The position numbers were made by a program, and so were the translations under genes. From Macrostomum lignano (lineage: Eukaryota), in assembly GCA_002269645.1 (NCBI GenBank), contig NIVC01002158.1, forward strand, positions 62,001 through 126,000: a stretch of DNA of 64,000 nucleotides, read 5' to 3'. Of this stretch, positions 11,446-64,000 are shown piece after piece. Within the stretch, counting starts at the first letter, position 1. Each line of letters begins with the position of its first letter. The notes below the pieces were generated by a model, which worked only from the letters and a program-made list of their open reading frames with translations, searched no databases and was not told the origin of the DNA.

Positions 11446-11970
11446 CTGAACACAGACTGGACAGAGATCGAGGTCATCGACCTGATCAGCGACTCCTCCG
11501 GTTTGGGCTTCGGCATCATCGGCAGCAAGAGCACCGGTGTGGTTGTCCGCACGATTCTGTCCGGTGGCGCGGCGGACACGGATGGCCGGCTGCGATCAGG
11601 CGACCACCTGCTGTGCATCGGGCTGGTGAGCGTTCGCGGCATGAACAGCGAGCAGGTTGCCAGCGTGCTGCGCCAGAGCGGCGATCGAGTCAGACTGGTC
11701 GTGGCCAGGGTGATTCACGACCCGGCAGCGGAGAGCACCGTCGGAGTGGACGGCCGTTGCTGCCAGCTGGTGCCAACTGGGGAGCTCGAAGCCCACCTGG
11801 AAGCTCTGGTTGCCGCGCTGGACGCTTGCGCTGCAGCTTCAGCGGAGGAGGAGCAGGAAGAGCAGCAGGCTGAGGCTCCCTCAGTGGACGACTCAGCAGG
11901 AGCGGCAGCTGCGGCTGCGGCTGCGACTGCCCCAGCTGTTGCTGATGTAGGCGCAGTGGATGCAGGACAA
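11446..11970 (+). CDS. MPDZ: Exon 2: PDZ2 of MPDZ/PATJ-like protein plus Ala/Glu-rich linker
   Basis: ttcacag| acceptor, CAA|GTAAGT donor, phase 0-0. Translation [55 protein letters not shown]...[23 protein letters not shown] closely matches MPDZ PDZ2 as I recall it ([25 protein letters not shown]...MSSEQVAQVLRQCGNRVKLMIAR). Confidence 0.95.
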
Positions 11971-15745: not shown

Positions 15746-16307
15746 GTGAGCCGAGTTAGTTTTTCTCAAACCAATTTCCATCTAGAAGTCCAAGTTAAGC
15801 AGAGCTGGTCGCGGTTAGTCAAATCAAGCAGAGCTCCACGCGGTAAAAGTGCTACAAGTGTCACGCGCCATTATTTCGGTCAAATGTCTGTTTAATGAAG
15901 TGCTCGGATGAGCTGGGCTAGGATGAGAGTTGACAACAACTGTAGCCAGGGGGGAGAAGGGACAAAGCGCCAGGGATGGGACAAAGGACTGAAGAGGGAT
16001 TTGAGATTGGCGGCCTGAGCAGGGAGTTTGCGCACGCGAAAGCAACAACCGGATCTCATGCGGGCACGCAGGGCCTGCCGTGACTTCAAAAGAAATTTTG
16101 CTATTCGACAGCTACACTAATTTCACACTGGGGAGGCGATTTGAGCTCAGGTAGCAGAGCGATTGAGATTAGCTCGGCAAAAACAGCCCGCGGAGTGTCT
16201 TGCTGATAAACGGAAATTAAAAACAGGCCCTTTATTCAAAGCAAATTCTATCTTATATAGGACACAATTCGATAAATATGGAAAGATGGATTAAAAAGAT
16301 AATTAGG

Positions 16308-16880
<573 letters not shown>

Positions 16881-17971
16881 GAATGGATCCGTCAGTTGCC
16901 ATGGAGACACGCCACGCTCGAATTCCGCTTTGAATGCCAGGCTAATGATGAAGCTGCTCTCGGCAAATATAGAATTCGAGATCCTATACGTGGAGGCCGG
17001 GACTAATTACTCGCAGCAAGGAGAGGCTGCAAAAAAATCTGTAAAAAATGAGACGCCAGGGTAGCAAGAATCCGATCAAAGGGAGAGAGGCGGGCTGACA
17101 GAGATGGAAAAGTCATCCGTATAAATTTTAATTATGATCGAATCTCTGCTAATTCCGCCTCCCAGCCAGCCAGATCCGCTAATTAAGCTTGCCGAGTTTG
17201 AGTAGGAAAAATTTTGCTCAAAAGAAATTATTAGACCCGCACGAGTGCCTGCTATAAAGCGATCTACGATACATATCGTTAGCTTTTTAGTGGCCCAGCT
17301 GGGCAGAATTTTCACAAAGTACATGCATGGACTTCTTCAGCCGTCTTCAGCTCCGAAGTTTCAACTGTTTCCCCAGCCTCTAAGCTACATCAAATATTTG
17401 GGCAAAAGCTTAATGGACAATCTTTCAAGCAAGCAGTTCTTCTTCCAGCAGTCTTCCGAGAGCCCCCAGTTGAAAACTTGAAGAGCGGCGCATCCCGGCT
17501 TAGCAAAAGCATGCCGTGCCGCCGCTGGGCCTCGTCAAGTGGCGGCCCGACCAGGCGGGGAAGACAAACCGAAGGAAGGGGAGGAGGAAGGAAGGAATCG
17601 GCAAGATCGAAAAAGGAATCTGCGCCAAGGAAGCAAGCCGCTTGGCGATCCTATCTTCATCCCAAAATCCCCTCGCCGCCCAAAGCCATGCTGCAAAAGT
17701 CTCGACACTTTGAGAGGCCTCTGCGCCCCCTCCCTTGGCTTGATTCGCCTGCCTGCTGTTGCTGCGTGCACACGCGGAGAAGCTGGGCCCCGCGCTGGGT
17801 CTCTGGGTGCGCCGGACTGCAAACAGATTCACTTCAGGCCTTACACTGTCTGCCCCTCTCACCCATTATTTGATTGGTCTTAGCCAGGGTAGACTGACGT
17901 TAGAAATCTGGACTGTAGGGCGATGTTTTTCAGCTTAAACATTAATTAATGCCCACGAGGTTACTCTAATT

Positions 17972-26731: not shown

Positions 26732-27382
26732 GTGAACGGTCATCGTCTGCACGGTCTGAACCATCTCGAGGTTGTAGAGATCCTCAAATCGCTTCCCCAG
26801 CACGTGTGCGTGATTTGCTCTCGCAAGCGGCCGACACAGCCTAAGCAGAACCTGACAGGCCAACTGAAGAAGCAGACAGGCATGGCTGCCGTATCGGCCA
26901 ACAACTCGGTACCCGGGGCCAAAAGCAGATCGTTTGACAATTTCTCTGGCATGGGCGTCTGGTCCGACTCCCCGACGGTGGTAGAGCTTGAGAAGACCAC
27001 CAGAGGCCTGGGGTTCAGCGTGCTGGACTATCAAGATCCGCTGTGCCCGGAGGACTCCGCCGCGGTGATCATCGTCCGCAGTCTGGTGCCAAACGGAGCT
27101 GCCCATCGGGACGGACGGATCCTGCCAGGCGACCGGCTGCTGTTTGTCAATGACGTCAGCCTAGAGCGCGCCAGCCTGGAGGAGGCGGTCCGCTGTTTAA
27201 AAGCCGCGCCGCTGGGTCGCATTGTGCTGGGCGTGGCCAAACCGTGTCCGCTGCTGGCTCTCGCTGCTGCTGGCAGCGGCACTGCCAGTGGTGGAGGCGG
27301 CGCCGTAGGCAGCAAAGCCGCCGTCAGGGGAGTCAAGAAAGCCGGAGTATCCCCGACGGTTGCATCAGCAGCTGCTCGAAAG
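26732..27382 (+). CDS. MPDZ: Exon 9: end of PDZ4 and complete PDZ5
   Basis: cctctgcag| acceptor, AAG|GTAAAT donor, phase 0-0. VELEKTTRGLGFSVLDYQDP...IIVRSLVPNGAAHRDGRILPGDRLLFVNDVSLERASLEEAVRCLKAAPLGRIVLGVAKP matches the diagnostic MPDZ PDZ5 motif GLGFSILDYQDP. Confidence 0.97.
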
Positions 27383-27436: not shown

Positions 27437-27650
27437 GAGATCAGTGAATTGTCGGTAGGGTGAGACGGCTGAGATCAGTGAAGTGTCGGTAGGGTGAGAC
27501 GGCTGAGATCAGTGAATTGTCGGTAGGGTGAGACGGCTGAGATCAGTGAAGTGTCGGTAGGGTGAGACGGCGGAGATCAGTGAATTGTCGGTAGGGTGGG
27601 ACGGCTGAGATCAGTGAATTGTCGGTAGGGTGAGACGGCTGGGATCAGCG
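27437..27650. repeat. 34-bp minisatellite GAGATCAGTGAATTGTCGGTAGGGTGAGACGGCT, about 6 copies
   Basis: Period 34 (27437 to 27471). Confidence 0.93.
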
Positions 27651-28082
27651 AGGCGACGGCAGGTGGGGACAGTGCAATAAGTGAAATCTTAGCATGATAA
27701 AAATGCCAGTCACTCAGACGAGGCAACAAAGCTTCTACTTGGAGCTCAGATTTTCAAAAAAAGTATATTAGACTCTTTTCTTAGTAAAACTATGCCTTGT
27801 CTGTGTTTTTCGTCCTTTATCGTGCTCCTTCTCGTGTCATATCAAAGGGTATCAGATCTTTTGACTTTTCACAAAGGCTTTCGACCAAGCCAAAAGTGCG
27901 CAACTGCCCAGCTTGGCATTTACAAAAACAACTATTTTTTCGACGGAATGTTGCGGTCACTGCGACAGACAGAGCCGCTTGGCTCTGGTGCAGTCAGGTC
28001 TAAGAAATTCCGTTTTAAGGCTAGCATTTTCTAGCTTCTAGTCTGGTCAGTCTAGATAATCTAAAACGTCTGGGTTTTAGTC

Positions 28083-28287
<205 letters not shown>

Positions 28288-28324
28288 CTGAAGTGAAAGT
28301 GCTAACCCGTTTCCAAACCGATAG

Positions 28325-29026
28325 TCCCTGTGCCACGTGTCGACCTCTCAATTGGCTGACATCACGGACGGCAATTGGAGACCAGCAACTGCAGCATCCA
28401 CTCCATCTCCGCCGTCATCATCCTCTTCATCGAGCACGTTCGACCCCCAGCGCGCTGACAATCGGGTCAGCGACGATCCAGAGCAGCTGGACAGCCGTCT
28501 GCGGCTACACAGCATTGAGGAGGATGCGGGAGCGCCAGCAATAACTCCCACTGCTTCTGCTCCGGCAGCCTCCGAATCATCCTTCCCCGTGACGCCACCG
28601 CCCGACGAATCGACAACAAAATCGGACGACACTCAGGCTCGAGTTGACACAATTCAGGACGAGTCGATTGATGGGCAGAGTAGCGCCGCGTCGGCTACCC
28701 CGGATTCCGAGCAGCTGAGCGAGTTTAGCTCGGAGCTGGTCAGAAGGGCGCTGGACAATGTGCTGGCCCAGTGCGCTGAGGAGCGACTCGTCTGCCACCG
28801 CCTGGTGTCAGAGGTGCTGGACGAGGCTCAGAGAAGAATCAACGCCGAGCTTCAACAGCAGCTCGAGATTGTGGTCAACAACGTAAACGGGAGTGTCGAG
28901 TCTTCGTTGAGTTCGAGTGGCTCCGAGCAGAGTTTGATCTCTTCATCGTCCAGCGGCGACATGCTGGGAGATCTGGAGCGACTGAGGGACTGCGGCTCCG
29001 ACACTGATGCACTGTTTAATCACCTG
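28325..29026 (+). CDS. MPDZ: Exon 10: 234-aa Ser/acidic linker between PDZ5 and PDZ6, with a predicted helical segment
   Basis: Long GC3-rich open frame. ccgatag| acceptor (phase 0) and CTG|GTGAGG donor (phase 0). Confidence 0.8.
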
Positions 29027-29543
29027 GTGAGGCTGAGACTAAGACACACTTTGTTGAACGAAGCGTAACGTACGATTCGTAAAGTTTCGCAAGGACCGCT
29101 AGAAGTTATGAGTGTATCAGGACGTAAATATAACCATCACGTTTGATGCATGGTAGTTTTAGGGTCCAACGGCAAATTCACTTAACTCAGTGCAAAACAC
29201 GATTTAATAAAAAAACCAAAATGAACCTTTTGATTCGAACCTTAAAATATAGTTCTCCAGTCATTGAGTGTGATAAGTTGTGACAACCCCGAACACCATA
29301 GCTTCTAATGATCCTTACTTTTATACACTCTTCGCATGTACATGTACGTCTCTTTGTACATGCTTGCTGCGGCGTTGCGAAACTGTAAAAACTAAAAATT
29401 TGTCTGCGATAGATGTCCGTGAACATCTATATGTAGTTTTATGATAAATGGTTGTAATCACAGCCTGAAGAGCTATTAACAGAGGATACAACTGCCAATT
29501 ACTGTACAAGGCTTGAGCCATGTATAATCGATTCTATCCTCAG

Positions 29544-29911
29544 GAGCAAACCACTGATGCAGACGAGCCCGCCGAGTATGACGACTTTGGCGATCAGAAC
29601 TCGGCGATCAGTTTTCAACATCGATGGCTTGACGACACGCCGCCACCCGCGCCAGAAAGTCTGGAGCGGAGCGTCCGGCTGAGCAAGACAACCGACTTCG
29701 AGGACCTTGGCTTGGCGCTGGAGTCTGTTGACAAAGGCGTCAACGGGTGCGTTGTCCGCGACCTCACGCCTGGTGGGCCGGCCGATCGGTGCGGCCAGAT
29801 CCGCCTGGGGGACTTCGTCATCAGCATCAACTCTGAGTGCACTCGGAGAGTGCCAACAGCCCAGGCCAGGGCCATCCTGCGACGGGCGGCACTTGTTAAT
29901 CAGGATGTCAG
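29544..29911 (+). CDS. MPDZ: Exon 11: most of PDZ6
   Basis: tatcctcag| acceptor (phase 0), AG|GTGACT donor (phase 2). SLERSVRLSK...LGLALES...CVVRDLTPGGPADRCGQIRLGDFVISINSE...TAQARAILRRAALV matches MPDZ PDZ6 (SFERTINIAK...TNAQARAMLRRHSLI). Confidence 0.95.
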
Positions 29912-30190
29912 GTGACTGACTGACTGACTGACTGACTGACTAACTGACTGACTGACTGACTGACTGACTGACTGACTGACTGACTGACTTGAGTGAGTGA
30001 GTGGCTGACTGACTGACTGACTGACTTGAGTGAGTGAGTGGCTGACTGACTGACTGACTGACTTGAGTGAGTGAGTGGCTGACTGACTGACTGACTGACT
30101 GACTTGAGTGAGTGAGTGGCTGACTGACTGACTGACTGACTTGAGTGAGTGAGTGGCTGACTGACTGACTGAGTGACTGACTGACTGACT
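29912..30190. repeat. (ACTG)n microsatellite with interspersed GACTTGAGTGAGTGAGTGGCT units, starting at the exon-11 donor
   Basis: Direct inspection. Confidence 0.95.
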
Positions 30191-30291
30191 GTTTTTGCAG
30201 CAAGTTTTAAGCCGTGCCTTATCTCTTGATGCGCGCAGTTTTAGCCAAGTCAACACTGAATGAAACGCCCCGTCCCACCCCACGCGCACAG

Positions 30292-60914: not shown

Positions 60915-61246
60915 AGTCCAACTTAATTCGATCTTCTTACACAAATGTCATTAATTTGACCGGTCAATCTCAAAGACAGGCGAGCCGCCATACTGATAGT
61001 CCAACTCAATTCGATCTTCTTACACAAATGTCATTAATTTGACCGGTCAATTTCAAAGACAGGCGAGCCGCCATACTGATAGTCCAACTTAATTCGATCT
61101 TCTTGCACAAATGTCATTAATTTGACCGGTCAATTTCAAAGACAGGCGAGCCGCCATACTGATAGTCCAACTCAATTCGATCTTCTTACACAAATGTCAT
61201 TAATTTGACCGGTCAATCTCAAAGACAGGCGAGCCGCCATACTGAT
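60915..61246. repeat. 83-bp unit x4, overlapping the 3' end of the minus-strand ORF
   Basis: agtccaact starts at 60915, 60998, 61081 and 61164. Confidence 0.95.
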
Positions 61247-61544
61247 TGCGCACCTGTCTAACAACGTCGTCCGTTCTTGGAGTGTTCAGGTAGGGCCGCA
61301 GAGTGCGCGTGAAGATGATCCGGTCGTTCACCAGCACATCGAACCGGTTGTGCCCGAACCTGTCCCGGTCGACTTCGAACCCCTGGATGGACATGTTGCC
61401 TGTGATTTTCTCAACGTAGATGCCGTGCACTAGCAGGTCGAACTGGTCTCGAAACGCCGGACTAAAGTGGATTTGGACATTCACGAAGAAGTCATCTACT
61501 TGGCTCACTGTTGAACTTTTTGGTTCGGTCTCGACTTTGCTCAT
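61200..61544 (-). CDS. 114-aa protein, probable Rdx-family (SelW/SelT/MIEN1-like) thioredoxin-like fold lacking CxxC/U
   Basis: gccATG, GC3-rich codons and an acceptor (tttctcag) 10 nt upstream of the ATG suggest a real gene with a 5'UTR intron. The pattern VQIHF..AFRDQFDLL...FDVLVNDRIIFTR...P..DDVVRQVR parallels MIEN1/SelW IVVEYCxxCGFEATYLEL...FEIEINGQLVFSK...FP..KDLIEAIR. Family assigned by eye. Confidence 0.55.
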   Translation of the reverse strand: MSKVETEPKSSTVSQVDDFFVNVQIHFSPAFRDQFDLLVHGIYVEKITGNMSIQGFEVDRDRFGHNRFDVLVNDRIIFTRTLRPYLNTPRTDDVVRQVRNQYGGSPVFEIDRSN

Positions 61545-62389: not shown

Positions 62390-64000
62390 CTTCCCTCATC
62401 TCTCTCTTCTCATATTCTCCTGTCCTCTCCTCTCCTCTCCTCTCCTCTCCTCTCCACTCCTCTCCTCTCCTCTCCTCTCCTCTCCTCTCCTCTCCTCTCC
62501 CTTTTCCTCTCCTCTCCTCTCCTCTCCTCTCCCTTTTCCTCTCCTCTCCTCTCCTCTCCTCTCCTCTCCTCTCCTCTCCTCTCCTCTCCTCTCCTCTCCT
62601 CTCCTCTCCTCTCCTCTCCTCTCCTCTCCTCTCCTCTCCTCTCCTCTCCCTTTTCCTCTCCTCTCCTCTCCTCTCCCTTTTCCTCTCCTCTCCTCTCCTC
62701 TCCCTTTTCCTCTCCTCTCCTCTCCTCTCCTCTCCTCTCCTCTCCTCTCCTCTCCTCTCCTCTCCTCTCCTCTCCTCTCCTCTCCTCTCCTCTCATCTCC
62801 TCTCCTCTCCTCTCCTCTCCCTTTTCCTCTCCTCTCCTCTCCTCTCCTCTCCCTTTCCTCTCCTCTCCTCTCCTCTCCTCTCCTCTCCTCTCCTCTCCTC
62901 TCCTCTCCTCTCCTCTCCTCTCCTCTCCTCTCCTCTCCTCTCCTCTCCCTTTTCCTCTCCTCTCCTCTCCTCTCCTCTCCTCTCCTCTCCTCTCCTCTCC
63001 CTTTTCCTCTCCTCTCCTCTCCTCTCTCTTTTCCTCTCCTCTCCTCTCCCTTTTCCTCTCCTTTCCTCTCCTCTCCCTTTTCCTCTTCTCTCCTCTCCTC
63101 TCCTCTCCTCTCCTCTCCTCTCCCTTTTCCTCTCCTCTCCTCTCCTCTCCTCTCCCTTTTCCTCTCCTCTCCTCTCCTCTCTCCTCTCCTCTCCTCTCCT
63201 CTCCTCTCCTCTCCTCTCCTCTCCTCTCCTCTCCTCTCCTCTCCTCTCCTCTCCTCTCCTCTCCTCTCCCTTTTCCTCTCCTCTCCTCTCCTCTCCCTTT
63301 TCCTCTCCTCTCCTCTCCTCTCCTCTCTCTCTCCTCTCCTCTCCTCTCCTCTCCTCTCCTCTCCTCTCCTCTCTCTCCTCTCCTCTCTCTCCTCTCTCTC
63401 CTCTCCTCTCCTCTCCTCTCCTCTCCTCTCCTCTCCTCTCCTCTCCTCTCCTCTCCTCTCCTCTCCTTTCCTCTCCTCTCCTCTCCTCTCCCTTTTCCTC
63501 TCCTCTCCTCTCCTCCTCTCCTCTCCTCTCCTCTCCTCTCCTCTCCTCTCCTCTCCTTTCCTCTCCTCTCCTCTCCTCTCCTCTCCTCTCCTCTCATCTC
63601 CTCTCCTCTCCCTTTTCCTCTCCTTTCCTCTCCTCTCTCTTTTCCTCTCCTCTCCTCTCCTCTCCCTTTTCCTCTCCTCTCCTCTCCTCTCCCTTTTCCT
63701 CTCCTCTCCTCTCCTCTCCTCTCCACTTCTCTCCTCTCCTCTCCTCTCCTCTCCCTTTTCCTCTCCTCTCCTTTCCTCTCCTCTCCTCTCCTCTCCTCTC
63801 CTCTCCTCTCCTCTCCCTTTTCCTCTCCTCTCCTCTCCTCTCCCTTTTCCTCTCCTCTCCTCTCCTCTCCTCTCCTCTCCTCTCCTCTCCTCTCCTTTCC
63901 TCTCCTCTCCTCTCCTCTCCCTTTTCCTCTCCTCTCCTCTCCTCTCCCTTTTCCTCTCCTCTCCTCTCCTCTCCTCTCCTGTCCTCTCCCTTTTCCTCTT
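62390..64000. repeat. (CTCTC/TCCTC)n pentanucleotide polypyrimidine array, running off the window
   Basis: Direct inspection; source of the 438-aa ERRGE pseudo-ORF. Confidence 0.98.

What the first reader, a model, noticed from the sequence alone, without database searches (positions are those of the whole stretch)
28709..28840. Two tandem AKAP-like (PKA RII-binding) amphipathic helices inside the PDZ5-PDZ6 linker
The otherwise disordered linker contains EQLSEFSSELVRRALDNVLAQCAEERLVCHRLVSEVLDEAQRRI. The first helix, L-S-E-F-S-S-E-L-V-R-R-A-L-D-N-V, fits the AKAP consensus spacing and aligns with the AKAP7/AKAP18 anchor as I recall it ([17 protein letters not shown]). The second, (V)CHRLVSEVLDEA, also fits the xxLVxxVLxxA pattern of Ht31-type anchors. 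I know of no report that MPDZ/PATJ is an AKAP. If real, this polarity scaffold would recruit PKA directly, and only in isoforms that include exon 10 (not the PDZ8-start forms).
Basis: partly seen in the sequence, partly recalled or inferred. Interest (0 to 1): 0.7.

Follow-up and report, generated by a model that had tools for sequence, protein, structure and literature searches.

The report
Candidate PKA-anchoring helices in flatworm Patj
A flatworm (Macrostomum lignano) multi-PDZ polarity scaffold carries, in the linker between two PDZ domains, a confidently helical stretch whose two motifs resemble known PKA-anchoring helices and recur in related proteins, but binding is untested and the feature is lineage-restricted, not shown to be general to MPDZ/PATJ.

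Summary
It lies in a 703-nt coding exon of the Macrostomum lignano 'Patj homolog' (A0A1I8IKU8, 99% identical), between two PDZ domains.

AlphaFold2 predicts one continuous helix of about 68 residues (pLDDT >95) spanning both motifs, not two separate helices.

For an AKAP-like reading:
- Both motifs satisfy the published AKAP rule of hydrophobic or small residues at positions 2, 5, 6, 9, 10, 13, 14 and 17.
- They are acidic and have the 3.8-4.0-residue periodicity of known anchoring peptides, not a heptad.
- The same motif type recurs in 1-3 copies at this linker position in one Macrostomum paralogue and two metagenomic orthologues.
- A profile of these helices finds the AKAP7/AKAP18 RII-binding helix (PDB 4ZP3) as top hit among 177,635 PDB sequences, though at E=0.46.
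- Reciprocal scoring with published anchoring peptides puts each set in the top ~0.03% of background.

Against:
- No Pfam AKAP family matches.
- The window's own helices score below known peptides.
- One paralogue lacks them.
- Nothing similar was detected outside this lineage.
- No docking or binding could be tested.

Verdict: a real, conserved, AKAP-like docking-helix module and a plausible lineage-specific AKAP candidate (about 0.4). It is not evidence that MPDZ/PATJ in general anchors PKA.

The parts
28325..29027 (+). Linker exon (703 nt, 234 codons plus 1 base) of the multi-PDZ 'Patj homolog' gene. It is mostly S/P/A-rich and low-confidence, and it contains the helices and a conserved C-terminal motif.
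   Evidence: ORF and splice signals. tblastn of P0001 gives 98.7% identity over 28319-29026. P0001 is UniProt A0A1I8IKU8, M. lignano.
28706..28909 (+). AF2-predicted single continuous alpha-helix of about 68 residues that includes both AKAP-like motifs and a further amphipathic tail (RRINAELQQQLEIVVNNV).
   Evidence: helix at residues 9-76 of window:28682-29026, with pLDDT 96-98 over residues 11-60; no 3.5-residue periodicity (0.04).
28712..28765 (+). Motif H1, QLSEFSSELVRRALDNVL. Residues at AKAP positions 2, 5, 6, 9, 10, 13, 14, 17 are L, F, S, L, V, A, L, V.
   Evidence: rank 12 of 59,641; shuffle p=3e-4; periodicity peak 3.8-4.0; 25-mer pI 4.18. Position rule from PMC12083921.
28778..28831 (+). 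Motif H2, EERLVCHRLVSEVLDEAQ. Residues at AKAP positions 2, 5, 6, 9, 10, 13, 14, 17 are E, V, C, L, V, V, L, A.
   Evidence: rank 11 of 59,641; shuffle p=3.5e-4; 25-mer pI 5.59. MAFFT independently aligns it in register with helix 2 of P0003 and the helix of P0040.
28943..29026 (+). Conserved acidic, serine-rich motif SSSSGDMLGDLERLRDCGSDTDALFNHL at the end of the linker exon. It is the only part of the linker that HMMER detects in relatives, and it anchors the orthology of the linkers.
   Evidence: hits cover query residues 178-230 only. Alignments show invariant D, L, L, E, D, G, S, D, T, D, A, L, N. AF2 gives a weak helix here, pLDDT about 50.
26981..27208 (+). PDZ domain immediately upstream of the linker ('PDZ5' in MPDZ/PATJ numbering; the numbering is inferred).
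   Evidence: Pfam PF00595, E=3.9e-15. Best PDB match is InaD-like protein 2d92, E=7.7e-26.
29700..29888 (+). PDZ domain immediately downstream of the linker ('PDZ6'; the numbering is inferred).
   Evidence: Pfam PF00595 and PF17820, E about 1e-8. Exon 29517-29909 is mapped by tblastn.

Best explanation
The linker between two PDZ domains of this Macrostomum lignano Patj/MPDZ-type scaffold contains an exposed amphipathic helix. That helix carries two adjacent docking motifs of the kind AKAPs use to bind the docking/dimerisation (D/D) four-helix bundle of PKA regulatory subunits. Proposed mechanism: each motif presents a stripe of paired small and aliphatic residues (F/V-S/C ... L-V ... A/V-L ... 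V/A) that packs into the D/D groove of an R-subunit dimer. The PDZ array would thereby hold one or two PKA holoenzymes next to its PDZ-bound membrane and junction ligands. Shown here: the helix, the motif fit, its recurrence in related proteins, and its reciprocal similarity to published anchoring peptides. Inferred: that the partner is a PKA R subunit, and that binding occurs in vivo. The module is lineage-restricted. It occurs in some Macrostomum paralogues and two unidentified metagenomic eukaryotes, and was not detected as a general MPDZ/PATJ feature.
For: (1) AF2 predicts a helix at pLDDT >95 with no intramolecular packing. The same holds for the three-motif orthologue P0003, which gives one long helix and no bundle. 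(2) Positions 2, 5, 6, 9, 10, 13, 14 and 17, the D/D-contacting face per PMC12083921, are hydrophobic or small in 8 of 8 (H1) and 7 of 8 (H2) cases (direct reading). (3) The same register recurs at the same linker position in P0007 (2 motifs), P0003 (3) and P0040/L002 (1). In L002 the helix lies between PDZ5-like and PDZ6-like exons. MAFFT reproduces the register unaided. The central V is invariant. (4) A profile of the 8 helices searched against 177,635 PDB sequences gives 4zp3_M as top hit. This is the AKAP7/18 helix, named as such in the PDB entry and, from my own knowledge, co-crystallised with the RIIalpha D/D. The match runs full length and in register. (5) A matrix from 7 published anchoring peptides ranks the helices 1, 2, 4, 5, 10-12 and 17 of 59,641 18-mers. 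The reciprocal matrix, built from the flatworm helices, scores AKAP-is, SuperAKAP-is and AKAP7 above all 58,111 background 18-mers. It also places Ht31, Chd8 and RIAD within the top 5. (6) Periodicity peaks at 3.8-4.0 residues, as in known anchoring peptides, and the 25-mer pI values are 4.2 and 5.6. (7) Tandem anchoring helices have precedent in SKIP and AKAP220. RI and RII date to the metazoan ancestor.
Against: No Pfam AKAP-type family hits the exon or the orthologous linkers, even at E<=10. The PDB top hit has E=0.46 at 13.8 bits, which is not significant alone. Single-sequence searches find no AKAP. The window's own motifs score about 11, below the leave-one-out range of known peptides (15.8-35). 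A profile of the non-window helices matches window H1 only weakly, at 5.5 bits. Paralogue P0009 keeps the C-terminal motif but lacks the helices. The scoring background is poor in helical proteins, and any amphipathic helix beats its own shuffles. The AKAP consensus is degenerate. No docking or binding test was possible.
Confidence: 0.4

Rival explanations
1. The helix is a docking or oligomerisation element for something other than a D/D domain. It could self-associate as a non-canonical bundle that clusters the scaffold, or it could bind another junctional or cytoskeletal partner.
For: AF2 gives a very confident, long, isolated helix in both the window protein and P0003, which is common for segments that are stabilised in oligomers or complexes. 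The AKAP pattern is degenerate. No AKAP family profile matches. The window helices score below known anchoring peptides.
Against: There is almost no 3.5-residue (heptad) periodicity over the 59-residue helix (0.04). In P0007 the two motifs are separated by about 45 residues that include prolines, and a proline lies between motifs 1 and 2 of P0003. They therefore behave as separate modules rather than one coiled coil. No talin or IpaA-type vinculin-binding-site chain appeared among the PDB hits at E<=10.
Confidence: 0.3
2. The helices dock a non-PKA protein that carries an RIIa-like or Dpy-30-like four-helix-bundle domain. Such proteins include the ciliary and sperm 'R2D2' class, which radial spoke protein 3 anchors. 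The module would then be AKAP-like in mechanism but would not recruit PKA.
For: The evidence is the same sequence evidence as for the main explanation. From my own knowledge, RIIa-fold proteins bind the same class of amphipathic helix. M. lignano is, also from my own knowledge, densely ciliated. RSP3 is a documented axonemal AKAP (PMC2169452, listed).
Against: Nothing in the window or the relatives points to cilia. The closest solved match is a bona fide PKA RII-binding helix.
Confidence: 0.1
3. The helix is a structural spacer or a fortuitous amphipathic helix in a fast-evolving linker, with no specific partner.
For: The linker is otherwise low-complexity and poorly conserved. Only the C-terminal motif is detectable by HMMER. 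Copy number varies from 0 to 3 among relatives. The simple consensus is expected about once per 450 residues (my estimate).
Against: The specific register, with small residues at fixed positions and an invariant central V, is retained across sequences that are otherwise unalignable. Shuffle tests give p about 3e-4 per motif and P=0.001 for two motifs in the exon. The few differences seen between near-identical copies (S/N in the window versus P0001; T/A in P0007 versus P0008) fall on polar-face positions.
Confidence: 0.15

Closest known systems
AKAP7/AKAP18 RII-binding helix (PDB 4ZP3 chain M, [22 protein letters not shown])
   Same: It is the top PDB match to the helix-family profile, aligned over 22 positions in register. 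It shares the L..LS..LV..AV..AV spacing with window H1 (L..FS..LV..AL..VL). In both cases the anchoring helix sits outside folded domains.
   Different: The match is only E=0.46. No Pfam AKAP family hit was found. The host protein is a multi-PDZ polarity scaffold unrelated to AKAP7. Binding is untested.
Designed or natural anchoring peptides AKAP-is, SuperAKAP-is, Ht31, RIAD and the Chd8 site
   Same: The family consensus ..VA.ELV..AL..AV matches AKAP-is LAKQIVDNAIQQA at every core position. A matrix built from the flatworm helices scores AKAP-is at 19.0 and SuperAKAP-is at 17.9, above all 58,111 background 18-mers. Peptide sequences come from PMC4526808 and PMC3468582.
   Different: The window's two motifs are weaker (about 11) than the orthologues' best motifs (22.2, 16.4) and weaker than known peptides in leave-one-out scoring. 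They lack the F/Y-A dipeptide that marks vertebrate RI-selective helices.
Multi-helix AKAPs (SKIP/SPHKAP, AKAP220)
   Same: They carry two or more anchoring helices in one protein, which allows several PKA holoenzymes per scaffold. Here there are 1-3 motifs per linker.
   Different: Those are vertebrate inventions with widely spaced helices. Here the motifs abut within one predicted continuous helix.
Canonical heptad coiled coil
   Same: A long, confident, isolated helix in the AF2 monomer model.
   Different: Hydrophobic periodicity is 3.8-4.2 per motif, with essentially no power at 3.5 over the whole helix. The motifs are separated by proline-containing spacers in relatives.
MPDZ (MUPP1) / PATJ (INADL) multi-PDZ scaffolds
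   Same: The window holds about 12 PDZ-coding regions on one strand. The best PDB match of the upstream PDZ is InaD-like protein. UniProt names the model 'Patj homolog'.
   Different: The helix plus SSSGD...GSDTDALFNH linker module was not found in arthropod Patj or in other invertebrate MPDZ-like proteins retrieved. It was also not found anywhere else in 1.84 billion representatives. Vertebrate MPDZ/PATJ linkers could not be fetched and scored.

Membership tests
AKAP (functional class: binds the PKA R-subunit D/D domain through an amphipathic helix) | A 14-18-residue segment with hydrophobic or small residues at positions 2, 5, 6, 9, 10, 13, 14 and 17 (PMC12083921) | tested here: met
   H1 has L, F, S, L, V, A, L, V. 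H2 has E, V, C, L, V, V, L, A (7 of 8). Sources. The strict 12-residue pattern, recalled from memory (Hundsrucker-type), matches once, at 28727-28762.
AKAP (functional class: binds the PKA R-subunit D/D domain through an amphipathic helix) | The segment actually forms an exposed alpha-helix | tested here: met
   AF2 gives a helix at residues 9-76 with pLDDT >95 and no packing against other elements. The same is seen in P0003. This is a prediction only.
AKAP (functional class: binds the PKA R-subunit D/D domain through an amphipathic helix) | Direct binding to RI/RII D/D, abolished by a proline substitution and competed by Ht31/RIAD | not testable with these tools
   No multimer docking is offered, and structure prediction accepts only window or retrieved sequences. 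No wet-lab data exist.
AKAP (functional class: binds the PKA R-subunit D/D domain through an amphipathic helix) | Sequence-profile match to a curated AKAP or RII-binding family (Pfam) | tested here: not met
   No AKAP-type family hits the window exon, P0003, P0040 or the P0007 linker, even at E<=10. Short-motif HMMs are insensitive, so this only modestly lowers the 'works like' claim.
AKAP (functional class: binds the PKA R-subunit D/D domain through an amphipathic helix) | Similarity to an anchoring helix solved in complex with a D/D domain | tested here: inconclusive
   The profile of 8 helices gives 4zp3_M (AKAP7/18) as top hit of 177,635 sequences, but at E=0.46. Reciprocal matrix tests are strongly enriched, but against a helix-poor background.
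AKAP (functional class: binds the PKA R-subunit D/D domain through an amphipathic helix) | Conservation of the hydrophobic face in orthologues | tested here: met
   The register is kept in P0007 (2 motifs), P0003 (3) and P0040 (1), with an invariant central V. It is absent from paralogue P0009 and from proteins outside the lineage.
Canonical coiled coil | Heptad (3.5-residue) hydrophobic periodicity over the helix | tested here: not met
   Power at 3.5 residues is 0.04 for the 59-residue helix. The motifs peak at 3.8-4.2, as known anchoring peptides do.
MPDZ/PATJ multi-PDZ scaffold | An array of many PDZ domains whose closest relatives are PATJ/MPDZ | tested here: met
   Pfam PDZ hits occur in exons across 11.4-58.8 kb. 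The best PDB match is InaD-like protein. The UniProt name is 'Patj homolog'.
MPDZ/PATJ multi-PDZ scaffold | N-terminal L27 domain and PDZ1 | not tested
   Model P0001 starts at a PDZ2-like domain at 11446. No PDZ or L27 was identified upstream in the window (one search checked one upstream ORF only).
Vinculin-binding-site helix (talin/IpaA type) | LxxAAxxVAxxVxxLIxxA-type spacing (from memory) and similarity to solved VBS peptides | tested here: not met
   No talin or IpaA chain appears among the PDB hits at E<=10. The helices keep a strict 4-residue pair spacing instead of the VBS spacing (direct reading).

The most novel reading that the evidence does not exclude
A Patj/MPDZ-type polarity scaffold in macrostomid-like flatworms has independently evolved into a multivalent AKAP. 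It would have done so by gaining and tandemly duplicating (0-3 copies) a D/D-docking helix in one inter-PDZ linker, placing one or more PKA holoenzymes directly on the PDZ array. This would be an invertebrate, lineage-specific origin of PKA anchoring, outside the vertebrate AKAP expansion described in the literature.
Probability: 0.3. Interest if true: 0.55.

Novelty: new member of a known kind. Interest (0 to 1): 0.4.

Why it matters
PDZ scaffolds are generally thought to obtain PKA indirectly, through separate AKAPs that bind them (my own knowledge). The documented AKAP repertoire is said to have expanded mainly at the base of vertebrates (PMC12083921). A PATJ/MPDZ-type scaffold with its own anchoring helices would be a compact example of convergent, lineage-specific AKAP evolution. 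It would sit in an experimentally tractable flatworm, which from my own knowledge has RNAi and transgenesis. The variable copy number among paralogues (0, 2) and orthologues (1, 3) gives natural controls. It would not by itself say anything about human MPDZ/PATJ.

Tried and rejected
(1) The search for homologous proteins with the exon alone found nothing at E<=0.01.
(2) The same tool with a PDZ5-linker-PDZ6 query returned mostly arthropod Patj, matching only the PDZ. This was no help for the linker.
(3) The profile of the linker (A1) added only P0040.
(4) A scan of JGI metagenome contigs with A3 gave 348 pattern matches but no relative.
(5) Pfam at permissive thresholds gave no AKAP family. 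The weak GIT_SHD, INTS5_N and ATP-synt_B hits are far below their cut-offs and were dismissed as helix noise.
(6) phmmer of the window 49-mer and of the P0003 helices against the PDB gave nothing relevant.
(7) A small local HMM built from 7 known peptides performed poorly in local mode and was replaced by an ungapped matrix scan.
(8) The literature held no MUPP1/PATJ-AKAP report. Searches for the published consensus pattern and for the THAHIT predictor found nothing usable. Alto 2003 is not held.
(9) The three-helix-bundle idea for P0003 was rejected, because AF2 gives one long helix.
(10) The heptad coiled coil was rejected on periodicity.
(11) The vinculin-binding-site idea was rejected.
(12) Fold search was not run, because a lone helix gives meaningless matches.

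Full report
**What is at the coordinates**

It lies in an open frame bounded by an AG acceptor (28323-4) and a GT donor (29028). This defines a 703-nt exon, 28325-29027.

An exhaustive HMMER search of 1.84 billion representative proteins found a 1195-aa protein that is 99% identical over the whole exon (P0001). That protein is UniProt A0A1I8IKU8, 'Patj homolog', from the free-living flatworm Macrostomum lignano. tblastn of P0001 maps eleven exons between 11.4 and 34.6 kb, and the linker exon is the ninth of this partial model.

Pfam finds PDZ domains in exons from 11.5 to 58.8 kb. These include one just upstream (about 26981-27208) and one just downstream (about 29700-29888) of the linker exon. 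The upstream PDZ's best solved relative is human InaD-like protein (PATJ).

The factual part of the observation therefore holds. The gene is a MPDZ/PATJ-type multi-PDZ scaffold, and the peptide is in an inter-PDZ linker whose remainder is S/P/A-rich. The 'PDZ5/PDZ6' numbering is plausible but inferred. 'Exon 10' and the isoform statement cannot be checked. The exon length is not a multiple of three, which argues against a simple cassette exon.

**Structure**

AlphaFold2 was run on window 28682-29026 with a five-sequence alignment. It predicts one continuous helix (residues 9-76, nt 28706-28909), with pLDDT 96-98 over residues 11-60. Low-confidence sequence follows, and then a weak helix over the C-terminal motif. 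The 'two tandem helices' are thus two motifs on one predicted helix.

The orthologue P0003, which has three motifs, is likewise predicted as one long helix and not as a folded bundle. In both cases the hydrophobic faces are left exposed in the monomer. That points to a partner or to self-association.

**Fit to the AKAP definition**

Falcone et al. 2025 (PMC12083921) define the AKAP determinant as a 14-18-residue amphipathic helix. Its positions 2, 5, 6, 9, 10, 13, 14 and 17 contact the D/D domain.
- H1 (QLSEFSSELVRRALDNVL, 28712-28765) has L, F, S, L, V, A, L, V at these positions.
- H2 (EERLVCHRLVSEVLDEAQ, 28778-28831) has E, V, C, L, V, V, L, A.

The 25-mers are acidic, with pI 4.2 and 5.6. 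The hydrophobic periodicity of each motif peaks at 3.8-4.2 residues, exactly like Ht31, AKAP-is, RIAD, AKAP7 and AKB-RII. The whole 59-residue helix has essentially no power at the 3.5-residue heptad period.

The loose 12-residue consensus is expected about once per 450 residues from amino-acid frequencies (my estimate). Motif fit alone is therefore weak evidence.

**Relatives**

Only the last ~50 residues of the exon (SSSSGDML.DLE..RDCGSDTDALFNH) are detectable by HMMER in other proteins. The proteins that share this motif are:
- two diverged M. lignano paralogue groups, P0002/P0007 (A0A1I8G7P9) and P0004/P0009 (A0A1I8GSX4);
- two sequences from metagenome assemblies, P0003 (L001) and P0040 (L002).

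In L002 the motif lies between a PDZ5-like exon and a PDZ6-like exon, so the linker is orthologous.

Upstream of the motif these proteins carry amphipathic helices in the same register:
- P0007: LNRISTEIVQLTMASVI and LQRISRGLVGDAIAGAK;
- P0003: LQNVAAELVTTALQEAV, YQTVAAHLVSSAVDSAV and HRFVADEIVNQTLVNAV;
- P0040: YQSVASELVNSAMNVAV.

P0009 lacks them. MAFFT aligns window H1 with helix 1 of P0007 and of P0003. It aligns window H2 with helix 2 of P0003 and with P0040, in this register and without guidance. The central valine is invariant. The family consensus..VA.ELV..AL..AV, matches AKAP-is (LAKQIVDNAIQQA) at every core position.

Copy number thus varies from 0 to 3. In P0007 the two motifs are about 45 residues apart with prolines between them. 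They behave as independent modules.

Arthropod Patj and two other invertebrate MPDZ-like proteins (P0010, P0020) have neither the helices nor the motif. A JGI metagenome scan added nothing. The module is lineage-restricted as far as these searches can see.

**Specificity tests**

(a) Pfam gives no AKAP-type family for the window exon or the orthologous linkers, even at E<=10.

(b) A profile of the eight helices was searched against 177,635 distinct PDB sequences. The first hit is 4zp3_M, 'A-kinase anchor protein 7 isoforms alpha and beta', aligned over 22 positions in register with [22 protein letters not shown].
- The E-value (0.46) is not significant on its own.
- A chance best hit would very rarely be an anchoring peptide.
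- No vinculin-binding-site peptide appeared.
- Single-sequence searches found no AKAP.

(c) An ungapped BLOSUM matrix was built from seven published anchoring peptides (PMC4526808 Table 1, plus 4zp3_M). It was scanned over 59,641 unique 18-mers drawn from all 40 retrieved proteins and the six-frame window.
- P0003 H1 ranked first, P0007 H2 second, P0040 fourth and P0003 H2 fifth.
- The window motifs ranked 10th-12th and P0003 H3 ranked 17th.
- The other top entries were low-complexity non-coding frames.

(d) Reciprocally, a matrix from the eight flatworm helices scored the published peptides against 58,111 background 18-mers.
- AKAP-is (19.0), AKAP7 (18.1) and SuperAKAP-is (17.9) scored above every background 18-mer.
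- Ht31, Chd8 and RIAD fell within the top five, although Ht31's best score came in a register shifted from the expected one.
- AKB-RI scored low, at 1.4 with 621 background 18-mers at or above it.

(e) Shuffling gives p about 3e-4 per window motif and P=0.001 for two hits in the exon.

Caveats:
- The background is poor in helical proteins, and any amphipathic helix beats its own shuffles.
- The window's motifs (about 11) score below the leave-one-out range of known peptides, 15.8-35.
- A profile of the non-window helices finds window H1 as best non-training hit, but at only 5.5 bits.

**Interpretation**

The most economical reading is that this linker carries a conserved, modular docking helix of the AKAP type. 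PKA R-subunit D/D domains are the best-precedented partner. RI and RII date to the metazoan ancestor, and multi-helix AKAPs exist (SKIP, AKAP220).

I put about 0.4 on genuine PKA anchoring and about 0.1 on another RIIa/Dpy-30-fold partner. I put about 0.3 on an unrelated partner or self-association, and about 0.15 on no specific partner. No docking or binding could be tested with the tools available.

Literature searches found no report of MUPP1/MPDZ or PATJ as an AKAP. The present evidence concerns a flatworm lineage, not vertebrate MPDZ/PATJ, whose linkers I could not retrieve.

**Verdict**

If true it would be a new member of a known kind. Interest is moderate (0.4).

Noticed in passing
window 28943-29026 (+); also P0007, P0009, P0003, P0040/L002 10250-10375: The most conserved element of the linker is not the helices. 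It is an acidic, serine-rich motif, SSSSGD(M/R)L.DLE..RD(C/T)GSDTDAL(F/L)N(H/Y), at the exon's 3' end. It contains CK2-like S/T-x-x-D/E sites and a [DE]xxxL[LF]-like 'DTDALF/DTDALL' (my reading). Its function is unknown. It always accompanies the helices but persists in the paralogue that lacks them.
   Followed up: partly
P0009 / P0004 (M. lignano A0A1I8GSX4 / A0A1I8IK69): One M. lignano paralogue keeps PDZ5, the C-terminal linker motif and PDZ6, but has no AKAP-like helix. Its best linker window scores poorly, at -18.9 in register. It is a natural negative control for binding tests.
   Followed up: partly
window 28721-28723 (S versus N in P0001); P0007 versus P0008 helix 1 (T versus A): The few differences between near-identical copies or alleles inside the helices fall on predicted polar-face positions (LSEF/LNEF; ISTEIV/ISAEIV). 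None fall on the hydrophobic stripe. There are too few events to test selection.
   Followed up: no
window 28085-28288 and 29913-30191; also 27500-27670: Long tetranucleotide microsatellites flank the exons: (AGAC)51 ends 37 nt before the linker-exon acceptor, and (TGAC)68 starts 4 nt after the mapped end of the PDZ6 exon (29909). A 34/68-nt minisatellite lies in the preceding intron. Many other simple repeats across the window create long spurious ORFs, for example 10-770, 1840-2455, 16248-16910 and 62410-63726.
   Followed up: partly
L002 9870-10010: In the metagenomic orthologue the reading frame upstream of the helix is interrupted by stops or a frame change. The contig name indicates 1.59x coverage, so this may be an assembly indel or an intron. 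More helices upstream cannot be excluded.
   Followed up: partly
window 61200-61544 (-): A 114-aa ORF lies on the opposite strand, downstream of the last PDZ exon. It has non-repetitive sequence and no Pfam match. It may be part of a neighbouring gene.
   Followed up: partly
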